Shown in pieces: positions 1-61,662 of a stretch of 64,000 nt of DNA. The stretch spans positions 1 to 64,000 of IMG/VR virus record IMGVR_UViG_3300031576_000002. One strand, given 5' to 3'. The notes under the pieces were generated by a model, which was not told where the DNA came from, did no database searches, and saw nothing but the letters and a program-made list of their open reading frames with translations. Within the stretch, counting starts at the first letter, position 1. Each line of letters begins with the position of its first letter. Made by a program: the position numbers and the translations under genes.

Positions 1-340
1 CGGTGGGGCTCACCCGCGCCGCAAATCGAGCGGTGCCCACGATCTCTGCCGTCTTCTGACGGTGCAGCCACACTTCAACGACAGGCGGCGGAGCTTGTGC
101 CGGGTTACCTGTCATGGACAGCCCCAGGCGCACCGCCATCGTGTCGAATACTCCGAGGAAGGTCTCGTAGCACATACGGCAGAAGCGCCCTGCCGTCGCC
201 GTGCCAAAAGGAGCCAGCGTGGGCTGCGGACCTCGCAGGCAACGGCTACACCGCGAGGATGTCTCGTAGGCCCACTCGGCGCCCATTACAACTGGGCTTT
301 GGTGATGGGGAGGACGCAGCGGCGTCCCCGGCACCCGCAT
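1..340 (-). CDS. Hypothetical protein with two CxxC pairs (runs off window edge)
   Basis: Manual translation from ATG at 340: open to the edge, contains CSRC and CRMC; starts 5 nt after the stop of 346-999. Confidence 0.4.
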   Translation of the reverse strand, partial: MRVPGTPLRPPHHQSPVVMGAEWAYETSSRCSRCLRGPQPTLAPFGTATAGRFCRMCYETFLGVFDTMAVRLGLSMTGNPAQAPPPVVEVWLHRQKTAEIVGTARFAARVSPT

Positions 341-2733: not shown

Positions 2734-3959
2734 CATGCGTGACCGCTTAAGCCGCCACCTGAGCAGCACTTAAGCCATCCTCTCGCTTCACAGAGGACCT
2801 TACAAGCGTATCCTCTCCACGAAGGGACAGCAGAGCCCTGTCTAAGACATTCTTAGCAGCGTTGACATCTCTATCAAGAACCAGGTTGCAGTAAGGACAA
2901 CTGTGACTTCTTTCTCTCAAACTCTTCTTCACAGTCATTCCACATCCACTGCACTCTTGGCTGGTTCCTCTGGGATCTACTTTCACCACTATCCTACCAG
3001 CTTCTTCCGCTTTGTAGGACAGCATGTGAAGCAACATCCCCATTCCGACATCCTTGAAGCTACGTCTGAATCCACGGTTGAGCCCTTGACTCATCCCTTT
3101 CAGGTTCAGGTCTTCAACCGCAATCAGATCATAGTTCTGTACCAACTGCTTAGACACTCCGTCAAGAATGTATTTGCGGGTTCTTGTTACTTTCTGCCAA
3201 GCCTTAGCCAATACCTTGACTGCTTTTCTTCTACGGTTAGAGCCTTTCTTTCTTCTGGAAACCGTTCTCTGAGCATGCTTGAGCTTCTTCTCATTCCTGG
3301 CATAAACCCGTTGCCTCTCGATAAGGACTCCATCTGATGTAGCAACCAGAGCTTGCATGCCTAGATCAATGCCTATGACTTTGCCAGTCTTGGGGAGAGG
3401 TTCTGGAAGCGGTAGCTCACAGGATAAGACTGCGTACCAACCGTCAGCCTCTCTTTTGACTGTGACCTCTTTGACCTTAGCGTCTGGTGGAAGCTCTCGA
3501 TAAGGACTCCAACGGAAATGCCCCAGTTTGGATAGGTGAAGTCTCGGCCTATCAAACTTGAATCCAGTGCGGTTGTAGGTAAAGGAGTCGTACCGATCTC
3601 TGCTCTTGAATCTTGGAAAACCTGGCTTCTCTCCGCGCTTGACCCTTCTGAAGAAAGCCTTGTACGCTTTGTCCAGTTTCTGAAGGACTTGCTCAAGAAC
3701 TCTTGAATAGATTGTGTCATAGCCTTCTACCTGCTTGGAAACATGCTTAAGCTCCAGGCACTGATCGTAGTAGCTGAGAGTCCGCTTATGCTGCTTCCAC
3801 CCTAGGATTCGCTGTTCCAAGGCACAGTTGTAGAGGAAGCGGCATTGATCCAAGAGCCTCTGGAGGTTGATCTCCTGGGCTTTGGTCGGTTGAATCCGGA
3901 ACTTGTAGGAACGGCGCATAACTGCGGTATATCATAAATGGCTTAAGACGTCACACATG
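2734..3959 (-). mobile_element. Non-autonomous tnpB cassette with 20-bp terminal inverted repeats and 9-10-bp target-site duplication
   Basis: CATGCGTGACCGCTTAAGCC (2734-2753) vs GGCTTAAGACGTCACACATG (3940-3959): 17/20 complementary; flanks TCGCTCCACC (2724-2733) and CCGCTCCACC (3960-3969); no transposase inside. Confidence 0.8.
2747..3919 (-). CDS. tnpB: RNA-guided endonuclease TnpB (IS200/IS605 OrfB family)
   Basis: N-terminal HTH (YKFRIQPT), RuvC motifs GIDLG / VEDL / DRDVNAAKN, Zn finger CSGC...CPYC. Confidence 0.95.
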   Translation of the reverse strand: MRRSYKFRIQPTKAQEINLQRLLDQCRFLYNCALEQRILGWKQHKRTLSYYDQCLELKHVSKQVEGYDTIYSRVLEQVLQKLDKAYKAFFRRVKRGEKPGFPRFKSRDRYDSFTYNRTGFKFDRPRLHLSKLGHFRWSPYRELPPDAKVKEVTVKREADGWYAVLSCELPLPEPLPKTGKVIGIDLGMQALVATSDGVLIERQRVYARNEKKLKHAQRTVSRRKKGSNRRRKAVKVLAKAWQKVTRTRKYILDGVSKQLVQNYDLIAVEDLNLKGMSQGLNRGFRRSFKDVGMGMLLHMLSYKAEEAGRIVVKVDPRGTSQECSGCGMTVKKSLRERSHSCPYCNLVLDRDVNAAKNVLDRALLSLRGEDTLVRSSVKREDGLSAAQVAA

Positions 3960-10955: not shown

Positions 10956-11136
10956 TAACACCCTCTCCTCTTTTTGTGCGCTCCTTCTGCACACGACCGT
11001 AAGCTGCTTCCGCTTGCTCCCGAGTCGTCTCGATCCCTTCTCGCGCCTGCGTAGAAATAATACAGCGGACCATCAGCTCCCGCCACTTCACGGAGTCTGC
11101 CAGAATTTCCTTGATCGAGAGACGTCTCATGCTCAC
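10930..11136 (-). CDS. Small hypothetical protein
   Basis: GTGA overlap with upstream frame. Confidence 0.5.
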   Translation of the reverse strand: MSMRRLSIKEILADSVKWRELMVRCIISTQAREGIETTREQAEAAYGRVQKERTKRGEGVNGKHDDYR

Positions 11137-11366
11137 TGTTTCCCCCCTTGCGCCACCTTCACTTTCAGGCGGCGCTTTGCGTCTTTCAAGGTGGCCCCGT
11201 ACACCACTCCTTTACTCCAAGCGCCAATCCACTTATTCGTACCGCGCAAGATCAGGACCTCTCGCGGCGATCTATGCACTTCCCCCACGAACTCTGTACG
11301 CCAGGTGCCATCCGACAGTCGTCGGTCGTAGGCGTAGTGGTACCGTCCTTCAGAGCAGCGGAACCA

Positions 11367-11840
11367 CTACAAGACAGTAGCATCCTGTTTAACTGCGTAG
11401 CCCTGGGCATTCACGATTCTTCTAGCCCGCACGATCTTCTCCTTTCTAGCGCAAGCGCTCACGCACACTCGCTTGCAACTGCGCACCGGCAAAGCGCGGA
11501 CATAGCGGGAGGTGCCCTGATGGACAAAGTTGGAGTAGTCACCGTTGAGGGCGACAAAGGCCGCCTCCGAGCCGCGCGATTCCGATGTCCAGGCCAGGAT
11601 TAGTTTTGGGGCAACTCTGGCAATCTTCTTGGCCTCCGCAAGCGTCGGAAGGCGCCAGTCAGTGTGACCACCTTCCCTGCAACCCGTGGCATAGTCCACA
11701 GCTTGCTGCCAGGTCAGATAGCGGCTTGCCCTAAGCGCCACCTGCAATGTACCGCCTCCCGTCTTCGCACCTCGCTGCTTCGTAGAGGACGTAGCGGCCT
11801 TCTCCTTCTTCCTGAGCGTATTCAAATCAATCTTTTTCAT
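11367..11840 (-). CDS. DUF1566 (Lcl C-terminal, C-type lectin fold) protein; putative DGR target 1
   Basis: TWQQAVDYA...GGHTDWRLPT..E...WTS...RALPVR motifs. Confidence 0.8.
   Translation of the reverse strand: MKKIDLNTLRKKEKAATSSTKQRGAKTGGGTLQVALRASRYLTWQQAVDYATGCREGGHTDWRLPTLAEAKKIARVAPKLILAWTSESRGSEAAFVALNGDYSNFVHQGTSRYVRALPVRSCKRVCVSACARKEKIVRARRIVNAQGYAVKQDATVL
11481..11591 (-). repeat. Putative DGR variable region VR1 (paralogous to 31776-31886)
   Basis: Identical 23-nt and 19-nt blocks shared with VR2; internal differences at codon positions 1/2 of NNY codons. Confidence 0.75.
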
Positions 11841-30463: not shown

Positions 30464-31005
30464 GCACGCTCTCGTAGGCTGATCTCGATTCGCACGGCTC
30501 TCGATTCAGGCGTGACTCTTACTTCGACCCTGGAGGTATCAAGCGCTGCATCAAGCACTAACCGGGCTCTCCACCGTCTTGCCTCTCGATCATCGTCCCG
30601 CATCTGAAAGGTTTCATCTGGCTTCGGTATTCTACGTTTCCGCTTTCGTAGCCCCAGATCCAGTTCAGTCTGCTCGGTCGTACTTCGCGGACGTTCTGCA
30701 CGGTACAGGATTTCTTCTGCCAGTGGAGAAGCAGCTTTCAAAAAAGTCTGCCGTATGTACGGAAGCTGTCTCTCTGTCCACGCTGCGGATTCTACAGGTT
30801 TGCCTGAAGGGATGATGACTACGATACGGGCTCGGTCTCGTGGATGAAGTGTACCTTTCGGGTTCAGAAACTCTTTTGCCGCGTGTGCTACGGCAGCGCC
30901 TACTAACTGAAGATTTCTGAATTCTACTTTCGACAGTCCTTTATCATCCAGCGGAAGTTCCTGCTGACCCTTCAAGATACAGACCACGCGCCGAAGATGG
31001 ATCAT
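30460..31005 (-). CDS. Hypothetical protein
   Basis: ORF track; ATGA coupling. Confidence 0.5.
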   Translation of the reverse strand: MIHLRRVVCILKGQQELPLDDKGLSKVEFRNLQLVGAAVAHAAKEFLNPKGTLHPRDRARIVVIIPSGKPVESAAWTERQLPYIRQTFLKAASPLAEEILYRAERPRSTTEQTELDLGLRKRKRRIPKPDETFQMRDDDREARRWRARLVLDAALDTSRVEVRVTPESRAVRIEISLRERA

Positions 31006-32807
31006 CGTTCGCGCCGAAAGACGCGGTGAAACTCGCCCGGCGGCTGTTGGTGGAGCTGCACTTGATCGGCTTCATCCACGCCGTAGGGTGGCAGGCGACC
31101 CTGGTTCCAGCGGCGAATCTTGGGGCGTGCTTTGAGGCTCGGCATGATCGGGCCTAGACCACGGGCACGGTCCATGCGCTCCATCTCTTCCAGGTCGCCT
31201 ACCGTTAGAAAGCGACGCCGCTTGTGCGGAACGATCAGCGTTTGGTCCCGGTCTCTTTTCGCATACCCCCCACCCATGCCGGGGTAGTGATAGAGTTCGG
31301 GATCGACGTATTCGTCCGGCTCCAGAGATGTCCAGCGCGGTTGGTACTCCGCCGCCTCGTGAACAGTAACGCGATCCCCGACACCAATACGGCTTGTCCG
31401 GCAGAATCCGCCCGCAGTCTCCAGCACTCCCCCCACACTCGCACAATGGTAGAGGTCATGATCGCCTGGCTGGACGTTGTGGACGATGCGAGCTACCTGG
31501 TAGCCACTACCGGCGTGACGCAGGAACACCATGTCAATCGGGAACGGGACCGTGGACATGTGAAAGGTAACGGACGCGGGAACGTGGTAGGGAAAGAGCA
31601 TGGCTTGGTCACGCTCCAAGCTAGAGTGCTTTGAAAGTCCAATACGCTTTTCGCTATCGGAATCGGCAACGTGTGCCCGGAGCTGGACTTTCCCTAGCCT
31701 TAAAATTACTTCTCGCATTGCGGTTCCCCTTTTCTCCTTCTTACCCTCTAGCCCATCTTCACCGAACTTGCGAAGGCGCACCGGCAAAGCGCGGGAGAAG
31801 TGGGAGTAGCCCTGGGCGCCGAAGTTGGAGTTGCCATTGAAGAGGTAGACGTAAGCCGCCTCCGAGCCGCGCGATTCGGAGGTCCAAATCCATACGGGCT
31901 CTTTGTACAAGCCCGTCTCGTAAATCCTCTTCGCCTCTTCTGCCGTAGGAAGTCTCCAATCTGTGAATCCTCCCTCTCGATAGTTTCTGGCGTAGGTTGT
32001 GGCATCCTTCCAGTTGATGTCTTTTCCGTTGTGACCTTCGGCAACTTGAAGATTACCCAGCGGCTTGAGCCGCTTCTCTAGCTCTTCTGGATGACTGAAA
32101 AGCCACGCCTTTTCAAATTCTTCCGCCTTTACCTTTCCTAGCCCGATCTCATCCAAGATTGGAGCTATTTCTTTCGACACTCTCAGGTTTATTCTTTTAC
32201 CATCTACATCTTTCAACTGCCCACTTTCAGGATGAGCTAAGACGTAAGGCTCGCCACCCTTGAAAATCATATACAACGGTCCCTGCTCACTGTACTCCTT
32301 TGCTCTCTCTGGGTATCTAACACACCATCCTTGTGCGTCGTAGTCCTCGCATATACGCATGATTGCGGCTGGAGTCGTGGTCTTAACTACGGCGTAGGCT
32401 CCATCATCGTATATCTTCTGCTGTCCTTCCTTCTCCTCAATCTGCTTCTTATGTTCTTTGGACTCCTGACCTTTTGACTCTCGAATAACTTGGGCTAGAT
32501 CAGAAAAGGAACGGTACTGATTGATGTCTTTTGGACTTGTGAATCTCGGACTACTCTTTAGCTTGTCAAAGGTTATGAGAATGTCGTGAATCTTCTCAGA
32601 GTCCTCTGGAATTATAATGTCTTGCTTTTTGAGAAGTCGTAGGATCCACCCCAGATACTTCTTCTCGGTAGTAGGATCGGCTTCGGCAGCATCTCGTATC
32701 TTGGCTTCCTCGAACTGAGGAAACAGTTGGAGAAGCTTGGAAAGCCTTTCCTCCAAGCCTCCTCCCAGCAGCCAAACCGCAGAATGGAGCGTACCTGCCC
32801 TATTCAC
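31002..32807 (-). CDS. Multidomain protein: DPT..KY..W/KDINQY/WC phage domain + DUF1566 C-type lectin (putative DGR target 2) + DUF192
   Basis: INWKDATTYA...GGFTDWRLPT...WTSES...RALPVR; then 'VADS..EKRIGLS...MLFPY....FHM..VPFPIDMVFL...VLETAGG' (DUF192). Confidence 0.8.
   Translation of the reverse strand: MNRAGTLHSAVWLLGGGLEERLSKLLQLFPQFEEAKIRDAAEADPTTEKKYLGWILRLLKKQDIIIPEDSEKIHDILITFDKLKSSPRFTSPKDINQYRSFSDLAQVIRESKGQESKEHKKQIEEKEGQQKIYDDGAYAVVKTTTPAAIMRICEDYDAQGWCVRYPERAKEYSEQGPLYMIFKGGEPYVLAHPESGQLKDVDGKRINLRVSKEIAPILDEIGLGKVKAEEFEKAWLFSHPEELEKRLKPLGNLQVAEGHNGKDINWKDATTYARNYREGGFTDWRLPTAEEAKRIYETGLYKEPVWIWTSESRGSEAAYVYLFNGNSNFGAQGYSHFSRALPVRLRKFGEDGLEGKKEKRGTAMREVILRLGKVQLRAHVADSDSEKRIGLSKHSSLERDQAMLFPYHVPASVTFHMSTVPFPIDMVFLRHAGSGYQVARIVHNVQPGDHDLYHCASVGGVLETAGGFCRTSRIGVGDRVTVHEAAEYQPRWTSLEPDEYVDPELYHYPGMGGGYAKRDRDQTLIVPHKRRRFLTVGDLEEMERMDRARGLGPIMPSLKARPKIRRWNQGRLPPYGVDEADQVQLHQQPPGEFHRVFRRER
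31776..31886 (-). repeat. Putative DGR variable region VR2
   Basis: Same length as VR1 (37 codons), no indels, identical flanking blocks. Confidence 0.75.
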
Positions 32808-34664: not shown

Positions 34665-36680
34665 CTACAGACTCCTTCGGAATCGAATGACGCCGCCAAA
34701 CTTCTCCCTGGCTGGAAGTTGAGCGTACCGGGAAATGTGGACGCCTGCGTTAGCGACGATTTCGTTCCTACGGCGCCGCATGTCCTTGGCGTCCTCGAAA
34801 ATGTCTTGCGTCGCTAAACGGTGGACGCCGACAAAGCAGATTGCAAGGTCGCTGCTCCCGCCCCGGGGATGGTCCACCCGCTTCTCATTGGCACGCTCTA
34901 GCTGCCTCAGCTCGTAGTACGCCTTCGTCGCCGGTGCGTCTCGAAGCGCGGGGTCGTACTGAGGGCGTTCAGGCGCGGGCAGCTCGATCCGTCTTCCAAT
35001 TGCGTCGGCCGCAAAACGGTCGTAGTCATCTACATTGATGTTGTGCTCGTCTACTTTCAAGCCCGCTGCACGTAGCTGCTGGATCAAATAGACCGAGTTC
35101 CAGTGGTCGTAAGTTATTTGCGCAATGTTAATGTGCTTGCGCAGGTCCTGGAGAAACTTGAGCGTAGACGGAAAATGAACTTCCCTTACAGGCGCTACTA
35201 CACCGCGCGGTGGACGCAACGGGCGAAACTCAATGCACGCATCGTAGACCACGTGGTAGTGGGGAAGTTTCCCTTCTAGGTGCCCAATCACGATTCCGAA
35301 ACTGTCCGACCTATAACCAGGGTCGCAGTGGATCCAGCGCGGAATCACGCGATCCGTCCTGCACTTGTCAAGTACCATCCGAACATACGGATGATCGGCC
35401 TCCTCAAAAAATTCTTCCCTGCAAGTCAGCAGCGGTTTCCGCATTGTCGTGATTGCTTCCACAGCCCCTTCTGGAAGAAGGCGGGGACGAATCCCAAGTG
35501 GCTTCGCCATGAAGTCCCGCTCGGCACCTACAGGATCCGCTTCAAGAGCGGCGGCAAAGTCCTCCTGCGTAAACTCCGGATTCATCTCTGGCGTCGTGTA
35601 GTGACGGAAGAAAATTTTGAGACCTGGAAATTGACGGGCGTTACGCCCCAGGCGCATGATCTTATCTTCGTCGTGAATCGGCGAGGAGATCGAAAACATC
35701 ATCGGCTTACAGGGGGGAAGGACTCCGCGGCGCAGTAAGAACTTGTAACGCCCTTGCAACGTCTTGAGAGAGTGCGAAAGCACTCGGTAAACTTCGTCCG
35801 CACTGATCTTGGAGTCGCCCAGGCCGAAGCGGGCTAGCTCGTCAAGGTAGCAAGCAAGTCGGGTACTTCCCGCTAGCCCAGAAGAGTTGCTATTCCGGCT
35901 CACGCAGACAAATCCTTTTTCTATAAAGTCGATACGACTCTCGGCTTCATCGTCGAACAGGGCCTTACCTGTCTCCATTTCCCTTCGACGCAAGTCTGAA
36001 AGGTAGATTTGAAACCATGGACTACCGTAAAGAAATTGCTTGAAGTTGGCCCAAATCGTGTCTTTCGTCTGTAGTGCGGTACTCGCTACAAATGCAATCT
36101 CGATTGGAGGCCCTGACATCAAACCAAAGGCTTTTCGTACTGTAGAAGGAAGCCCTAGTAGACGGTGGACAAGATAAGATCCATCCCTGCCTGCGTAAAA
36201 GCTCTTACCCGCACGCATACCCGAGATAAGTACAAACTCCTCGTAGTCCGTTAAACGCTCCGCTCGTAGACAGTCCAAGCGGGTAATCCCGCACTCTAGG
36301 CATACGTCATTCTTGAAAATGATCTGCTTTGAAAAATCCTGCTGGTCTAACGGAATACGACGAATAGCTTCTACATCCTGGCAGTAGGGACACAGTAATT
36401 CGTAAAAATCGCGGAAAATTTCGTGGCTTCTCGGGTAGAGCGCTGGACCCGCGCTCAACTCTTCTCCCGTGTACAAAAACCCGGGAGTCTCGATCCAGTC
36501 GATGACGTTGGTAGCCTGCCTGGCAGCAGGCGACGCCGTGGGCGCGGTATTGGCATTGCTCGGATCGAGCCGAGCAATCTCGTCTAGGATCGGACTTGTC
36601 CGCCGCTCTAGCGAGTCAGACTTGCCCGTCTGCTGGCTTTTCGTCCTGCGGCGCGATTTTGACGGGCCACCGAGGCTCAA
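34665..36680 (-). CDS. terL: Terminase large subunit
   Basis: Walker A GMRAGKS, Walker B CYLDE, nuclease IHCDPG, C-terminal DHPRGGSSD. Confidence 0.9.
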   Translation of the reverse strand: MSLGGPSKSRRRTKSQQTGKSDSLERRTSPILDEIARLDPSNANTAPTASPAARQATNVIDWIETPGFLYTGEELSAGPALYPRSHEIFRDFYELLCPYCQDVEAIRRIPLDQQDFSKQIIFKNDVCLECGITRLDCLRAERLTDYEEFVLISGMRAGKSFYAGRDGSYLVHRLLGLPSTVRKAFGLMSGPPIEIAFVASTALQTKDTIWANFKQFLYGSPWFQIYLSDLRRREMETGKALFDDEAESRIDFIEKGFVCVSRNSNSSGLAGSTRLACYLDELARFGLGDSKISADEVYRVLSHSLKTLQGRYKFLLRRGVLPPCKPMMFSISSPIHDEDKIMRLGRNARQFPGLKIFFRHYTTPEMNPEFTQEDFAAALEADPVGAERDFMAKPLGIRPRLLPEGAVEAITTMRKPLLTCREEFFEEADHPYVRMVLDKCRTDRVIPRWIHCDPGYRSDSFGIVIGHLEGKLPHYHVVYDACIEFRPLRPPRGVVAPVREVHFPSTLKFLQDLRKHINIAQITYDHWNSVYLIQQLRAAGLKVDEHNINVDDYDRFAADAIGRRIELPAPERPQYDPALRDAPATKAYYELRQLERANEKRVDHPRGGSSDLAICFVGVHRLATQDIFEDAKDMRRRRNEIVANAGVHISRYAQLPAREKFGGVIRFRRSL

Positions 36681-37068
36681 AGGAATTTCCTTCCTGAAGG
36701 GTCGTCAGTCGGTCCAGCTCGAACATCCGCGTCGCCTGCTTGTTCCGGCAGAAGGCATACAGGACGAGCTTACCACCCATCTCGCGCAATTCGTAGGGCT
36801 CGATCATGCGCGTGGACTCGTTCCCGCCTCGGTCCCGGTACTTGACTCGCAACGTCTTGCGGTTGACCGCTGCCGCCCGGATTGCGTCCAGGGTGACTTC
36901 CATCGAAGAAAGGCCCATCTCAGGACTGTCTCCTTCCAAGGGCTGATTGATGAAGAGTTGGGGGCGGAAAGGACTTACCGCCTTGGGCTTTGGAGCACGC
37001 TTCCCTTTGGGAGGGGACGGCTTAAACCCGGCTGGAACTGATCCTTGTGGAAGCCGATGGTACGCCAC
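36616..37068 (-). CDS. Stand-alone WYL-domain protein
   Basis: AAVNRKTLRVKYRD..G..S.R.IEPY.L......LYAFC..KQA.RMF.LDR. Confidence 0.85.
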   Translation of the reverse strand: MAYHRLPQGSVPAGFKPSPPKGKRAPKPKAVSPFRPQLFINQPLEGDSPEMGLSSMEVTLDAIRAAAVNRKTLRVKYRDRGGNESTRMIEPYELREMGGKLVLYAFCRNKQATRMFELDRLTTLQEGNSFEPRWPVKIAPQDEKPADGQV

Positions 37069-54953: not shown

Positions 54954-54986
54954 GTCCGATCCTCCAATAGCCAGGGTTATCTGACC

Positions 54987-55028
54987 TAGTTGTGGTACCA
55001 CAACTAGCTAGCATTATACTACCTATCT
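54987..55028 (-). promoter_or_regulatory. 42-bp promoter+palindrome element, copy 1
   Basis: Minus strand AGATAGGTAGTATAAT then palindrome; 36/42 identical to 61621-61662. Confidence 0.8.
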
Positions 55029-61578: not shown

Positions 61579-61620
61579 GACTATACGATACCGCTTGAGA
61601 TTAGGTAAGCTCAGCCTACC

Positions 61621-61662
61621 GAGTTGTGGCAGAACAACTAGGTAGGATTATACTACCTATCT
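61621..61662 (-). promoter_or_regulatory. 42-bp promoter+palindrome element, copy 2
   Basis: 36/42 identical to 54987-55028. Confidence 0.8.

What the first reader, a model, noticed from the sequence alone, without database searches (positions are those of the whole stretch)
31002..32807. DGR-type variable region buried inside a three-domain fusion
VR2 is not C-terminal. It follows a large-phage 'DPT..KY..W...KDINQY...WC' domain and reads in frame into a DUF192 domain that has its own SD (AAGGAGAAAAGGGG) and ATG. VR1 shows the same arrangement with an in-frame downstream SD and start. Both long and short products are possible, coupling a hypervariable binder to other domains.
Basis: partly seen in the sequence, partly recalled or inferred. 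Interest (0 to 1): 0.6.

Follow-up and report, generated by a model that had tools for sequence, protein, structure and literature searches.

The report
Orphan DGR-type variable region in fused gene
A 205-kb cave phage has a real 601-codon gene in which a small retroelement-type variable lectin domain sits between a widespread viral N-terminal module and a DUF192 domain, but the complete genome has no reverse transcriptase or template repeat, so the "variable" region is probably a frozen relic.

Summary
The ORF at 31002-32807 (-) is real and uninterrupted. Three assemblies of the same sample (JGI, ENA, Logan) agree across the VR2-to-DUF192 junction, so no stop is hidden. It has four segments:
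- an N-terminal module (aa ~13-235) absent from Pfam, with 1,698 mostly N-terminal relatives whose C-terminal parts are unrelated;
- a ~93-aa C-type-lectin domain of the Lcl_C/DUF1566 class carrying the 120-nt VR2 block;
- DUF192 (E 1e-19), preceded by a good ribosome-binding site and an ATG at M364;
- a 120-aa tail with no match.

VR2 bears a clear retrohoming signature. Against VR3 (genome 182946-183078), 0 of 40 third codon positions differ but 21 first or second positions do. In the flanking scaffold 33 of 50 third positions differ (p 2.5e-11).

The engine is missing. The two assemblies close the genome into a 205,000-bp circle, and it holds no RT, no Avd homologue and no adenine-bearing template repeat. 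Distant relatives of the lectin domain in other viral contigs are canonical DGR targets that stop 0-12 aa after the VR. Here VR1, VR2 and VR3 all run on.

My best reading is an orphaned DGR target fused in frame to neighbouring modules. Ongoing hypervariation is not supported. "VR1 has the same arrangement" holds only superficially.

The parts
31002..32807 (-). 601-codon ORF (GTG start overlapping the upstream gene's stop by 4 nt; 4-nt overlap with the downstream gene). Gene callers start at codon 18 (584 aa).
   Evidence: Homology to the paralogue P0003 starts at residue 13, upstream of the called start.
32103..32807 (-). N-terminal viral module, aa ~13-235. It is not in Pfam or PHROGs. The fold is confidently predicted and has no clear PDB match.
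   Evidence: no family. (1,698 relatives). (similarity ends at aa ~234). (pLDDT 90.2). (no PDB match; weak GNAT-like Z<=7). (BFVD: PA5oct 'structural protein' E 1.5e-9, and PcfJ-like proteins).
31767..32045 (-). C-type-lectin domain of the Lcl_C/DUF1566 class, aa 255-347. It is homologous from 'LQVA' to 'VR(L/S)(R/C)K' to whole small target genes elsewhere in the genome.
   Evidence: AF2 gives pLDDT 85-96 over this part. The best PDB match is the Legionella Lcl C-terminal domain 8q4e, E 9.3e-5.
31767..31886 (-). VR2: a 120-nt repeat block with 13 variable NNC/NNT codons between invariant anchors.
31719..31766 (-). 16-codon linker holding the SD-like AGGAG...GGGG (about 31726-31738) in front of the in-frame ATG.
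31365..31718 (-). DUF192 domain from M364 (Pfam match aa 377-481).
   Evidence: (PDB 3m7a, E 1.1e-4). (the nearest Atlas clusters are stand-alone 119-138-aa DUF192 proteins, mostly viral; score 0.84, a lead only).
31002..31364 (-). C-terminal tail, aa 482-601, with no family match, no paralogue and the highest G+C of the gene (0.628).
11367..11840 (-). VR1 gene (157 aa): a lectin domain plus a 34-aa Cys-rich tail. The VR1 block is 11472-11591.

Best explanation
The 601-codon ORF is a genuine single reading frame. A complete small DGR-target gene (a ~93-aa C-type-lectin domain ending in the variable region) is embedded in frame between a promiscuous viral N-terminal module and a DUF192 unit. 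That DUF192 unit is normally a stand-alone small phage gene and still carries its own ribosome-binding site and ATG.

Shown: VR2 was written by mutagenic retrohoming from a template it shared with VR3. The two blocks are identical at every third codon position and at all scaffold codons, and they differ only at first and second positions of NNC/NNT codons.

Shown: the phage genome, closed at 205,000 bp, encodes no reverse transcriptase, no Avd and no template repeat. VR1, VR2 and VR3 are therefore orphan variable regions. VR1 has also drifted at 7 third positions.

Inferred: an ancestral DGR served at least three targets lying within a 54-kb arc of the circle, and its RT-TR cassette was later lost. 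Once retrohoming stopped, the cis-acting elements that normally keep a VR next to an intergenic region were no longer needed. Stops after the VRs could then be lost and the targets could run into downstream sequence (+34, +90 and +254 residues).

Inferred: today the protein is a fixed-specificity lectin-type binder tethered to the N-module and to DUF192. Internal initiation at M364 may add a free DUF192-plus-tail product.
For: Real ORF with no hidden stop.

Domains.

Retrohoming signature: for VR2 against VR3, third-position differences are 0/40 inside the block and 33/50 in the flanking scaffold (p 2.5e-11), and 21 first/second-position differences lie inside the block. AAC/AAT codons survive in some copies at variable sites.

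The family is a true DGR-target family. Relatives in L148 and L144 sit beside an RT (E 2e-44 and 2e-39 to BPP-1 Brt) and a TR in which 14 of 15 and 15 of 16 mismatches are adenines.

Canonical relatives end 0-12 aa after the domain, and the genome's fourth, degenerate paralogue ends one codon after the block.

Complete genome: the ENA contig bridges the ends of the JGI contig, which share a 227-nt terminal repeat with 1 mismatch.

No RT, Avd or TR.

Stand-alone viral DUF192 clusters. RBS strength at M364. Mosaic G+C of 0.468 / 0.563 / 0.565 / 0.628 across the four segments.

Roux et al. 2021 (PMC8144416) explain the near-universal C-terminal VR by the need for intergenic cis elements.
Against: - Zero drift between VR2 and VR3 at about 100 non-variable bases means the last homing was recent relative to the divergence of the paralogues. 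A DGR still acting from elsewhere is therefore not excluded.
- The order of events (loss first, fusion after) is inferred from one genome. No relative with separate genes was found.
- Contigs cannot show rare VR variants.
- Three different extensions on three targets could instead reflect a selected design.
- No relic stop codon can be identified in the linker. Out-of-frame stops there are at chance level.
Confidence: 0.55

Rival explanations
1. The variable regions are still being diversified, by an RT and template repeat encoded outside the phage genome: on the host chromosome, on a co-resident prophage, or on a satellite. In that case the cis-acting homing elements would lie inside the coding linkers.
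For: VR2 and VR3 are identical at all 40 third positions and all scaffold codons, while their flanks are saturated with changes. This points to recent homing from one template. DGR components work in trans in experiments, and remote targets are known in bacteria (Wu et al. 2018, PMC5758913).
Against: - No TR-like copy was found in the genome, in IMG/VR, or in one genome per GTDB species.
- No conserved hairpin lies downstream of the three VRs; folding z-scores are -0.7 to +1.0.
- The assemblies show a single VR2 sequence at full depth.
- Wu et al. argue that remote targets are not expected for phage DGRs, because they would not be inherited together.
Confidence: 0.17
2. The fusion arose while the DGR was active and is a selected design: a diversifiable binder placed internally to aim the N-module and DUF192 at variable ligands. 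The RT-TR cassette was lost only afterwards.
For: All three homed targets carry different C-terminal extensions. The N-module is habitually fused to varied partners, and its BFVD relatives include ankyrin- and LRR-bearing proteins.
Against: The 18 ORFs from related viral contigs aligned keep the VR at the C-terminus. No second example of N-module+CLec or CLec+DUF192 exists among the 150 best N-module relatives or near the lectin relatives.
Confidence: 0.18
3. The pattern is not DGR-related. The copies are lectin paralogues kept alike by gene conversion, with diversifying selection on binding residues.
For: The identical 23-nt and 19-nt anchors could support recombination.
Against: Gene conversion would also homogenise the variable codons. 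The single-codon mosaic of invariant and NNC codons with no third-position change is the expected outcome of AAC-codon mutagenesis. Homologues of the domain are targets of verified DGRs.
Confidence: 0.06
4. The long ORF is an assembly or sequencing artefact that hides a stop or frameshift between the lectin domain and DUF192.
For: Stops occur in both other frames within the 16-codon linker.
Against: The JGI, ENA (MEGAHIT) and Logan assemblies, and small contigs of a second run, are identical through the junction. All come from one sample.
Confidence: 0.03

Closest known systems
DGR target proteins of the DUF1566/Lcl_C class (category 'd', CLec2 of Wu et al. 2018; example Legionella LdtA)
   Same: Same lectin-fold domain, and the same VR layout of a WTS...A.V.L..G.S....Q.....VR motif with NNC variable codons. 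Multiple targets occur per element, and the phage targets lie within about 50 kb of each other.
   Different: No RT, Avd or TR exists in the complete genome. The VR is internal, 254 residues before the stop, instead of at the C-terminus. Downstream sequence is coding rather than intergenic.
Bordetella phage BPP-1 Mtd/Brt/Avd/TR cassette
   Same: A phage-borne lectin-fold binder whose variable codons fit adenine-specific mutagenesis.
   Different: BPP-1 has the whole cassette adjacent, with the VR at the very end of mtd. Neither Brt nor Bbp7 has a homologue here.
Stand-alone DUF192 (COG1430) proteins, PDB 3m7a and 3pjy
   Same: The Pfam match is well above the cut-off, and aa 367-474 align to most of 3m7a.
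   Different: Here the domain is read in frame behind a lectin domain and followed by a 120-aa tail. There is no signal peptide. The family's function is unknown.
Nested in-frame phage genes made by internal initiation (for example lambda C/Nu3; from general knowledge)
   Same: An in-frame RBS plus ATG inside a longer ORF, placed at a domain boundary.
   Different: No expression data exist here, so the short product is hypothetical.

Membership tests
Diversity-generating retroelement (complete system) | DGR-clade reverse transcriptase in the same element | tested here: not met
   PF00078 gave no candidate in 205 kb, although the control genomes matched. The YxDD scan found only non-RT ORFs. 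BPP-1 Brt found nothing by the genome search, and phmmer --max against all six-frame ORFs gave a best E of 1.2. The genome is closed.
Diversity-generating retroelement (complete system) | Template repeat that matches the VR except for adenines at the variable sites | tested here: not met
   Only three copies of the block exist, and all are VR-like and coding. The anchor pattern is absent from IMG/VR and from GTDB genomes.
Diversity-generating retroelement (complete system) | Accessory Avd or HRDC gene | tested here: not met
   BPP-1 Bbp7 (Avd) has no homologue, and there is no Pfam hit near VR3. This is a weak test, because Avd proteins diverge fast.
DGR target / variable region | Differences confined to template-adenine sites (first and second positions of AAC/AAT codons) inside an otherwise identical block | tested here: met
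   VR2 against VR3 shows 21 differences at positions 1 and 2 and none at position 3 in 40 codons. The flanks show 33 of 50 third positions changed. This is inferred without the template.
DGR target / variable region | VR within a C-type-lectin fold | tested here: met
   Lcl_C at 33.4 bits. AF2 pLDDT is 85-96 and Foldseek finds 8q4e at E 9.3e-5. Relatives are targets of verified DGRs.
DGR target / variable region | VR at the C-terminus, followed by intergenic cis elements (IMH, hairpin) | tested here: not met
   254 coding residues follow VR2, 90 follow VR3 and 34 follow VR1. No conserved or unusually stable hairpin was found.
DGR target / variable region | Population heterogeneity at variable sites | not testable with these tools
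   Only contigs were available. They show one sequence, and contigs drop rare variants.
DUF192 (PF02643) | Profile match above the curated cut-off | tested here: met
   70.9 bits against a cut-off of 27, covering profile positions 2-95 of 96.
Lcl_C / DUF1566 (PF07603) | Profile match above the curated cut-off | tested here: inconclusive
   33.4 bits against a cut-off of 34.9. The precomputed annotation of P0001 lists PF07603, and the fold match supports it.
PcfJ-like / polyvalent-protein modules (for the N-terminal module) | Profile or fold match to PF14284 or to a described polyvalent-protein domain | tested here: inconclusive
   There is no Pfam hit. BFVD Foldseek hits to PcfJ-like proteins have E 1e-4 to 1e-2 with low TM scores. 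One of 84 relatives carries ART-PolyVal.

The most novel reading that the evidence does not exclude
The three internal variable regions are live targets of a DGR encoded outside the phage (on the host or on another mobile element). The homing signals would then be embedded in coding linkers. That would make this a phage that borrows a retroelement in trans to retune a binder tethered to an N-terminal virion- or injection-type module and to DUF192.
Probability: 0.12. Interest if true: 0.8.

Novelty: new variant of a known kind. Interest (0 to 1): 0.4.

Why it matters
DGR surveys start from the reverse transcriptase, so targets that have outlived their retroelement are largely unseen. This is a closed 205-kb phage genome with three such orphan targets, none of them C-terminal. 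It fits the published idea that C-terminal VR placement is enforced by homing signals: once homing stops, the constraint should go, and that is what is seen here. It also warns that a VR-like pattern alone does not show ongoing hypervariation.

Two by-products may be useful. First, the N-terminal module is a large viral domain family (1,698 hits) that is absent from Pfam. It has a confident predicted fold and no clear match among solved structures. Second, DUF192 appears as a phage gene that can be captured into a larger protein.

Tried and rejected
- Close relatives of the 601-aa protein, or of the neighbouring terminase, in IMG/VR: none.
- Word-index protein search with the full length, the N-terminal 250 aa and the C-terminal 351 aa: only the protein itself, plus one 931-aa Sel1/Lcl_C protein that matches the lectin part.
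- The exact 23-mer anchor in IMG/VR: none.
All hits were chance matches in GC-rich DNA, with none extending beyond about 36 nt.
- A two-anchor pattern in GTDB genomes and in IMG/VR: none.
- tblastn of the lectin domain against GenBank phages: none.
- The lectin alignment against GTDB genomes: one distant Chlorobiales hit, not informative.
- Hairpins or IMH-like structure after the VRs: not above shuffled controls.
- Promoter and terminator scans of the gene: at chance level.
- Rfam over 9-34 kb: nothing.
- Remnants of a cassette next to VR3 or VR1: none.
- PDB matches for the N-module: none by profile or Foldseek, and only weak GNAT-like Z<=7 by VIA, below the tool's stated noise level.
- The DUF192 half of the second AF2 model was unusable (pLDDT <50) because the alignment had no DUF192 relatives.
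- The idea that the record misses about 15% of the genome, which could have hidden the RT, was rejected after the circle was closed.
Full report
**1. What is there**

The window is the first 64 kb of a 205,227-bp IMG/VR virus record from a cave metagenome. On the minus strand, 31002..32807 is one open frame of 601 codons. It overlaps the stop of the upstream gene and the start of the downstream gene by 4 nt each. A terminase large subunit lies about 2 kb upstream (phrog_17415, E 2.9e-46). The other neighbours have no family. Gene callers start the gene at codon 18 (584 aa), but homology to a paralogue begins at residue 13, so the longer form is likely.

**2. Domains**

Pfam finds Lcl_C at aa 260-339 (33.4 bits; cut-off 34.9), a weak FGE-sulfatase match, and DUF192 at aa 377-481 (70.9 bits; cut-off 27).

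- *Lectin domain.* An AlphaFold2 model built on an alignment with lectin relatives gives pLDDT 85-96 for this domain. Its best solved match is the Legionella Lcl C-terminal domain (8q4e, E 9.3e-5), followed by other C-type-lectin folds.
- *N-terminal module.* The first 235 residues have no Pfam or PHROG family. An exhaustive HMMER search finds 1,698 relatives (514 at E<=1e-10). In these the ~200-aa module is mostly N-terminal, in proteins of 218 to 2,733 aa.
  - Similarity to the two closest relatives of comparable length (P0003 620 aa, P0007 600 aa) stops at about residue 234 and residue 201.
  - None of the 150 best relatives carries a lectin or DUF192 part.
  - Only 4 of 84 scanned relatives have any Pfam domain (ART-PolyVal, DUF4116, DUF5661, Ribosomal_L50).
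  - A paralogue lies at genome 99.8-101.7 kb.
  - The module folds confidently (pLDDT 90.2) but has no clear solved relative.
  - In BFVD it matches a PA5oct protein annotated as structural (E 1.5e-9), proteins of other large phages and of marseilleviruses, and more weakly PcfJ-like proteins.
It behaves as a promiscuous N-terminal module, and its function is unknown.
- *DUF192 part.* It aligns to PDB 3m7a and 3pjy, both uncharacterised. The nearest ESM-Atlas clusters are stand-alone DUF192 proteins of 119-138 aa, mostly viral (score 0.84, a lead only).
- *Tail.* The last 120 residues match nothing and have no paralogue.
- *Composition.* G+C differs by segment: 0.468, 0.563, 0.565 and 0.628.

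**3. The variable region**

A 120-nt block (31767-31886) recurs at 11472-11591 (VR1, in a 157-aa ORF). It also recurs at genome 182946-183078 (VR3, in a 190-aa ORF).

Read codon by codon, the block has invariant scaffold codons interleaved with 13 variable codons. These differ at the first and/or second position and end in C, or in T at one codon shared by all three copies. AAC or AAT survives at some of these sites in one or two copies.

| Comparison | Third-position differences | First/second-position differences |
|---|---|---|
| VR2 vs VR3, inside the block (40 codons) | 0 | 21 |
| VR2 vs VR3, upstream lectin scaffold (50 codons) | 33 | 35 |

- Third-position differences are far rarer inside the block than in the flank (Fisher p 2.5e-11).
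- Within a 35-codon core of the block, first/second-position changes (18) outnumber third-position changes (0) (p 5e-4).
- VR1 shares the pattern but has 7 private third-position changes.
- A fourth lectin paralogue directly after the VR3 gene shows ordinary divergence (21 of 39 third positions) and does not belong to the set.

This is what retrohoming from a common AAC-rich template produces. Gene conversion would not leave a single-codon mosaic.

The domain family is also a true DGR-target family. Nineteen viral contigs encode distant relatives (31-44% identity). Two of these loci (L148, L144) carry an RT (E 2e-44 and 2e-39 to BPP-1 Brt). They also carry a template repeat whose mismatches to the VRs are adenines in 14 of 15 and 15 of 16 cases.

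**4. The engine is absent, and the genome is complete**

- No fourth, adenine-bearing copy of the block exists in the record, even with 7-nt words.
- No RVT_1 match was found, while the control genomes matched.
- The only YxDD-bearing ORFs are not RTs.
- BPP-1 Brt and Avd find nothing; the best E is 1.2 with all HMMER filters off.
- CheckV rates the record 85% complete, which could have hidden the cassette. However, an ENA assembly of the same phage (205,093 bp) runs straight across the two ends of the JGI contig. Those ends share a 227-nt repeat with one mismatch.
- The genome is therefore a 205,000-bp circle, or a terminally redundant molecule, and nothing is missing.
- On that circle the three VRs lie within a 54-kb arc: VR3 to VR1 is 33.5 kb and VR1 to VR2 is 20.3 kb.
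- No cassette remnants lie beside VR1 or VR3.

**5. Position of the VR**

In the 18 ORFs from related viral contigs aligned, the ORF ends 0-12 residues after the lectin domain, typically with ...VRAVRAGQF and a stop. The fourth paralogue here also ends one codon after the block.

VR1, VR3 and VR2 instead continue for 34, 90 and 254 residues with unrelated sequences. Homology of VR2's domain to the small target genes runs from "LQVA", 8-10 residues after their start codons, to the last codon of the block. A whole small target gene is therefore embedded in frame.

Roux et al. 2021 describe C-terminal VRs as near-universal. They attribute this to the need for cis-acting homing elements to be intergenic (PMC8144416). 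Wu et al. 2018 describe the DUF1566 class and non-adjacent phage targets within about 50 kb (PMC5758913). Iyer et al. 2021 found no such lectin domains in 224 jumbo phages (PMC7824862).

**6. Is the fusion an artefact?**

No.

- A 28,462-nt Logan contig covers 29500-31877 and a 72,708-nt contig covers 31859-33500 with no difference.
- Small contigs of a second run of the same sample cover 31512-31856 without difference.
- The assembly graph breaks only at the 41 nt shared by VR2 and VR3.
- The "other letters" listed by the tool are VR1 cross-mapping.
- The ENA contig is identical over 7,546 nt including the whole gene.

All these data come from one sample.

**7. Internal start**

The ATG of M364 is preceded by AGGAG...GGGG. 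The duplex with a generic anti-SD is -7.8 kcal/mol, stronger than for 96% of 630 internal in-frame ATGs and 85% of crudely called starts. It lies 13 residues before the Pfam DUF192 match. A short DUF192-plus-tail product of about 238 aa is therefore plausible but not shown.

VR1 has AAGGAG and an in-frame GTG at the same distance from its block (24-25 nt), but only 20 codons follow. That spacing may be a relic of the RBS of a former downstream gene. This is inference.

**8. Interpretation**

- *Shown:* a real fused ORF; a lectin domain bearing a retrohoming signature shared with two other genes; no RT, TR or Avd in a closed genome; and non-canonical, internal placement of all three VRs.
- *Inferred:* the lineage once had a DGR serving these targets, and the cassette was lost. 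With homing gone, the constraint that keeps VRs at gene ends lapsed, and stops were lost so that the targets ran into downstream sequence. For VR2 that sequence was a DUF192 gene that still shows its own translation signals.
- *Function:* the present protein would be a fixed-specificity binder tethered to an N-terminal module of unknown but possibly virion-associated role. That suggestion rests on one annotated relative.
- *Main rival:* a DGR acting in trans, suggested by the absence of any drift between VR2 and VR3.

**9. Verdict**

The "hypervariable binder" reading lacks its engine. This is a new variant of a known kind: an orphan, internal DGR-type VR in a fused phage protein. Interest is moderate.

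Noticed in passing
window 1-227 and genome 205001-205227: The record's first and last 227 nt are the same apart from one mismatch at position 100, and an ENA contig bridges the ends. The genome is therefore closed at 205,000 bp, although it is listed as linear and 85% complete.
   Followed up: yes
window 2747-3919 (-): A TnpB / IS605 OrfB-like gene (HTH_OrfB_IS605, OrfB_IS605 and Cas12f1-like TNB domains). Two further copies, about 87% identical, lie at genome ~146.7-147.9 kb and ~160.0-161.3 kb. The copy in the window lies in the arc between VR3 and VR1, where a lost DGR cassette could have been.
   Followed up: partly
window 32103-32807 (-) and genome 99756-101744 (-): The N-terminal module is a large family absent from Pfam (1,698 hits, mostly viral, with invariant W, WC and Y positions). 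Its predicted fold is confident (pLDDT 90) and has no clear solved relative. A second copy in this genome heads a ~620-663-aa protein with an unrelated C-terminal part.
   Followed up: partly
L004 6370-6678 (-) = genome 182369-182677: A fourth lectin paralogue (102 aa) starts with an ATGA overlap on the VR3 gene and ends one codon after the VR-equivalent block. Its block has diverged normally, so it looks like an older target that is no longer homed.
   Followed up: yes
L004 6675-6965 (-) = genome 182674-182964: The VR3 gene also continues past its VR, into a 90-residue extension with no family, no paralogue and no internal SD.
   Followed up: partly
window 54984-55028 and 61618-61662: A 45-nt direct repeat (87% identity) whose 5' part is itself palindromic (ACCTAGTTGTGG..CCACAACTAG). 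It is possibly a repeated regulatory or terminator element.
   Followed up: no
window 36616-37068 (-); L004 8830-9717 (-): A WYL-domain protein lies directly upstream of the terminase gene. An NYN-domain (RNase-like) protein lies about 2 kb from VR3.
   Followed up: no
window 11133-11366: About 370 nt downstream of the VR1 gene hold only ORFs of 43-68 aa on the coding strand and no Rfam match. This is an unusually loose stretch in an otherwise tightly packed strand.
   Followed up: partly
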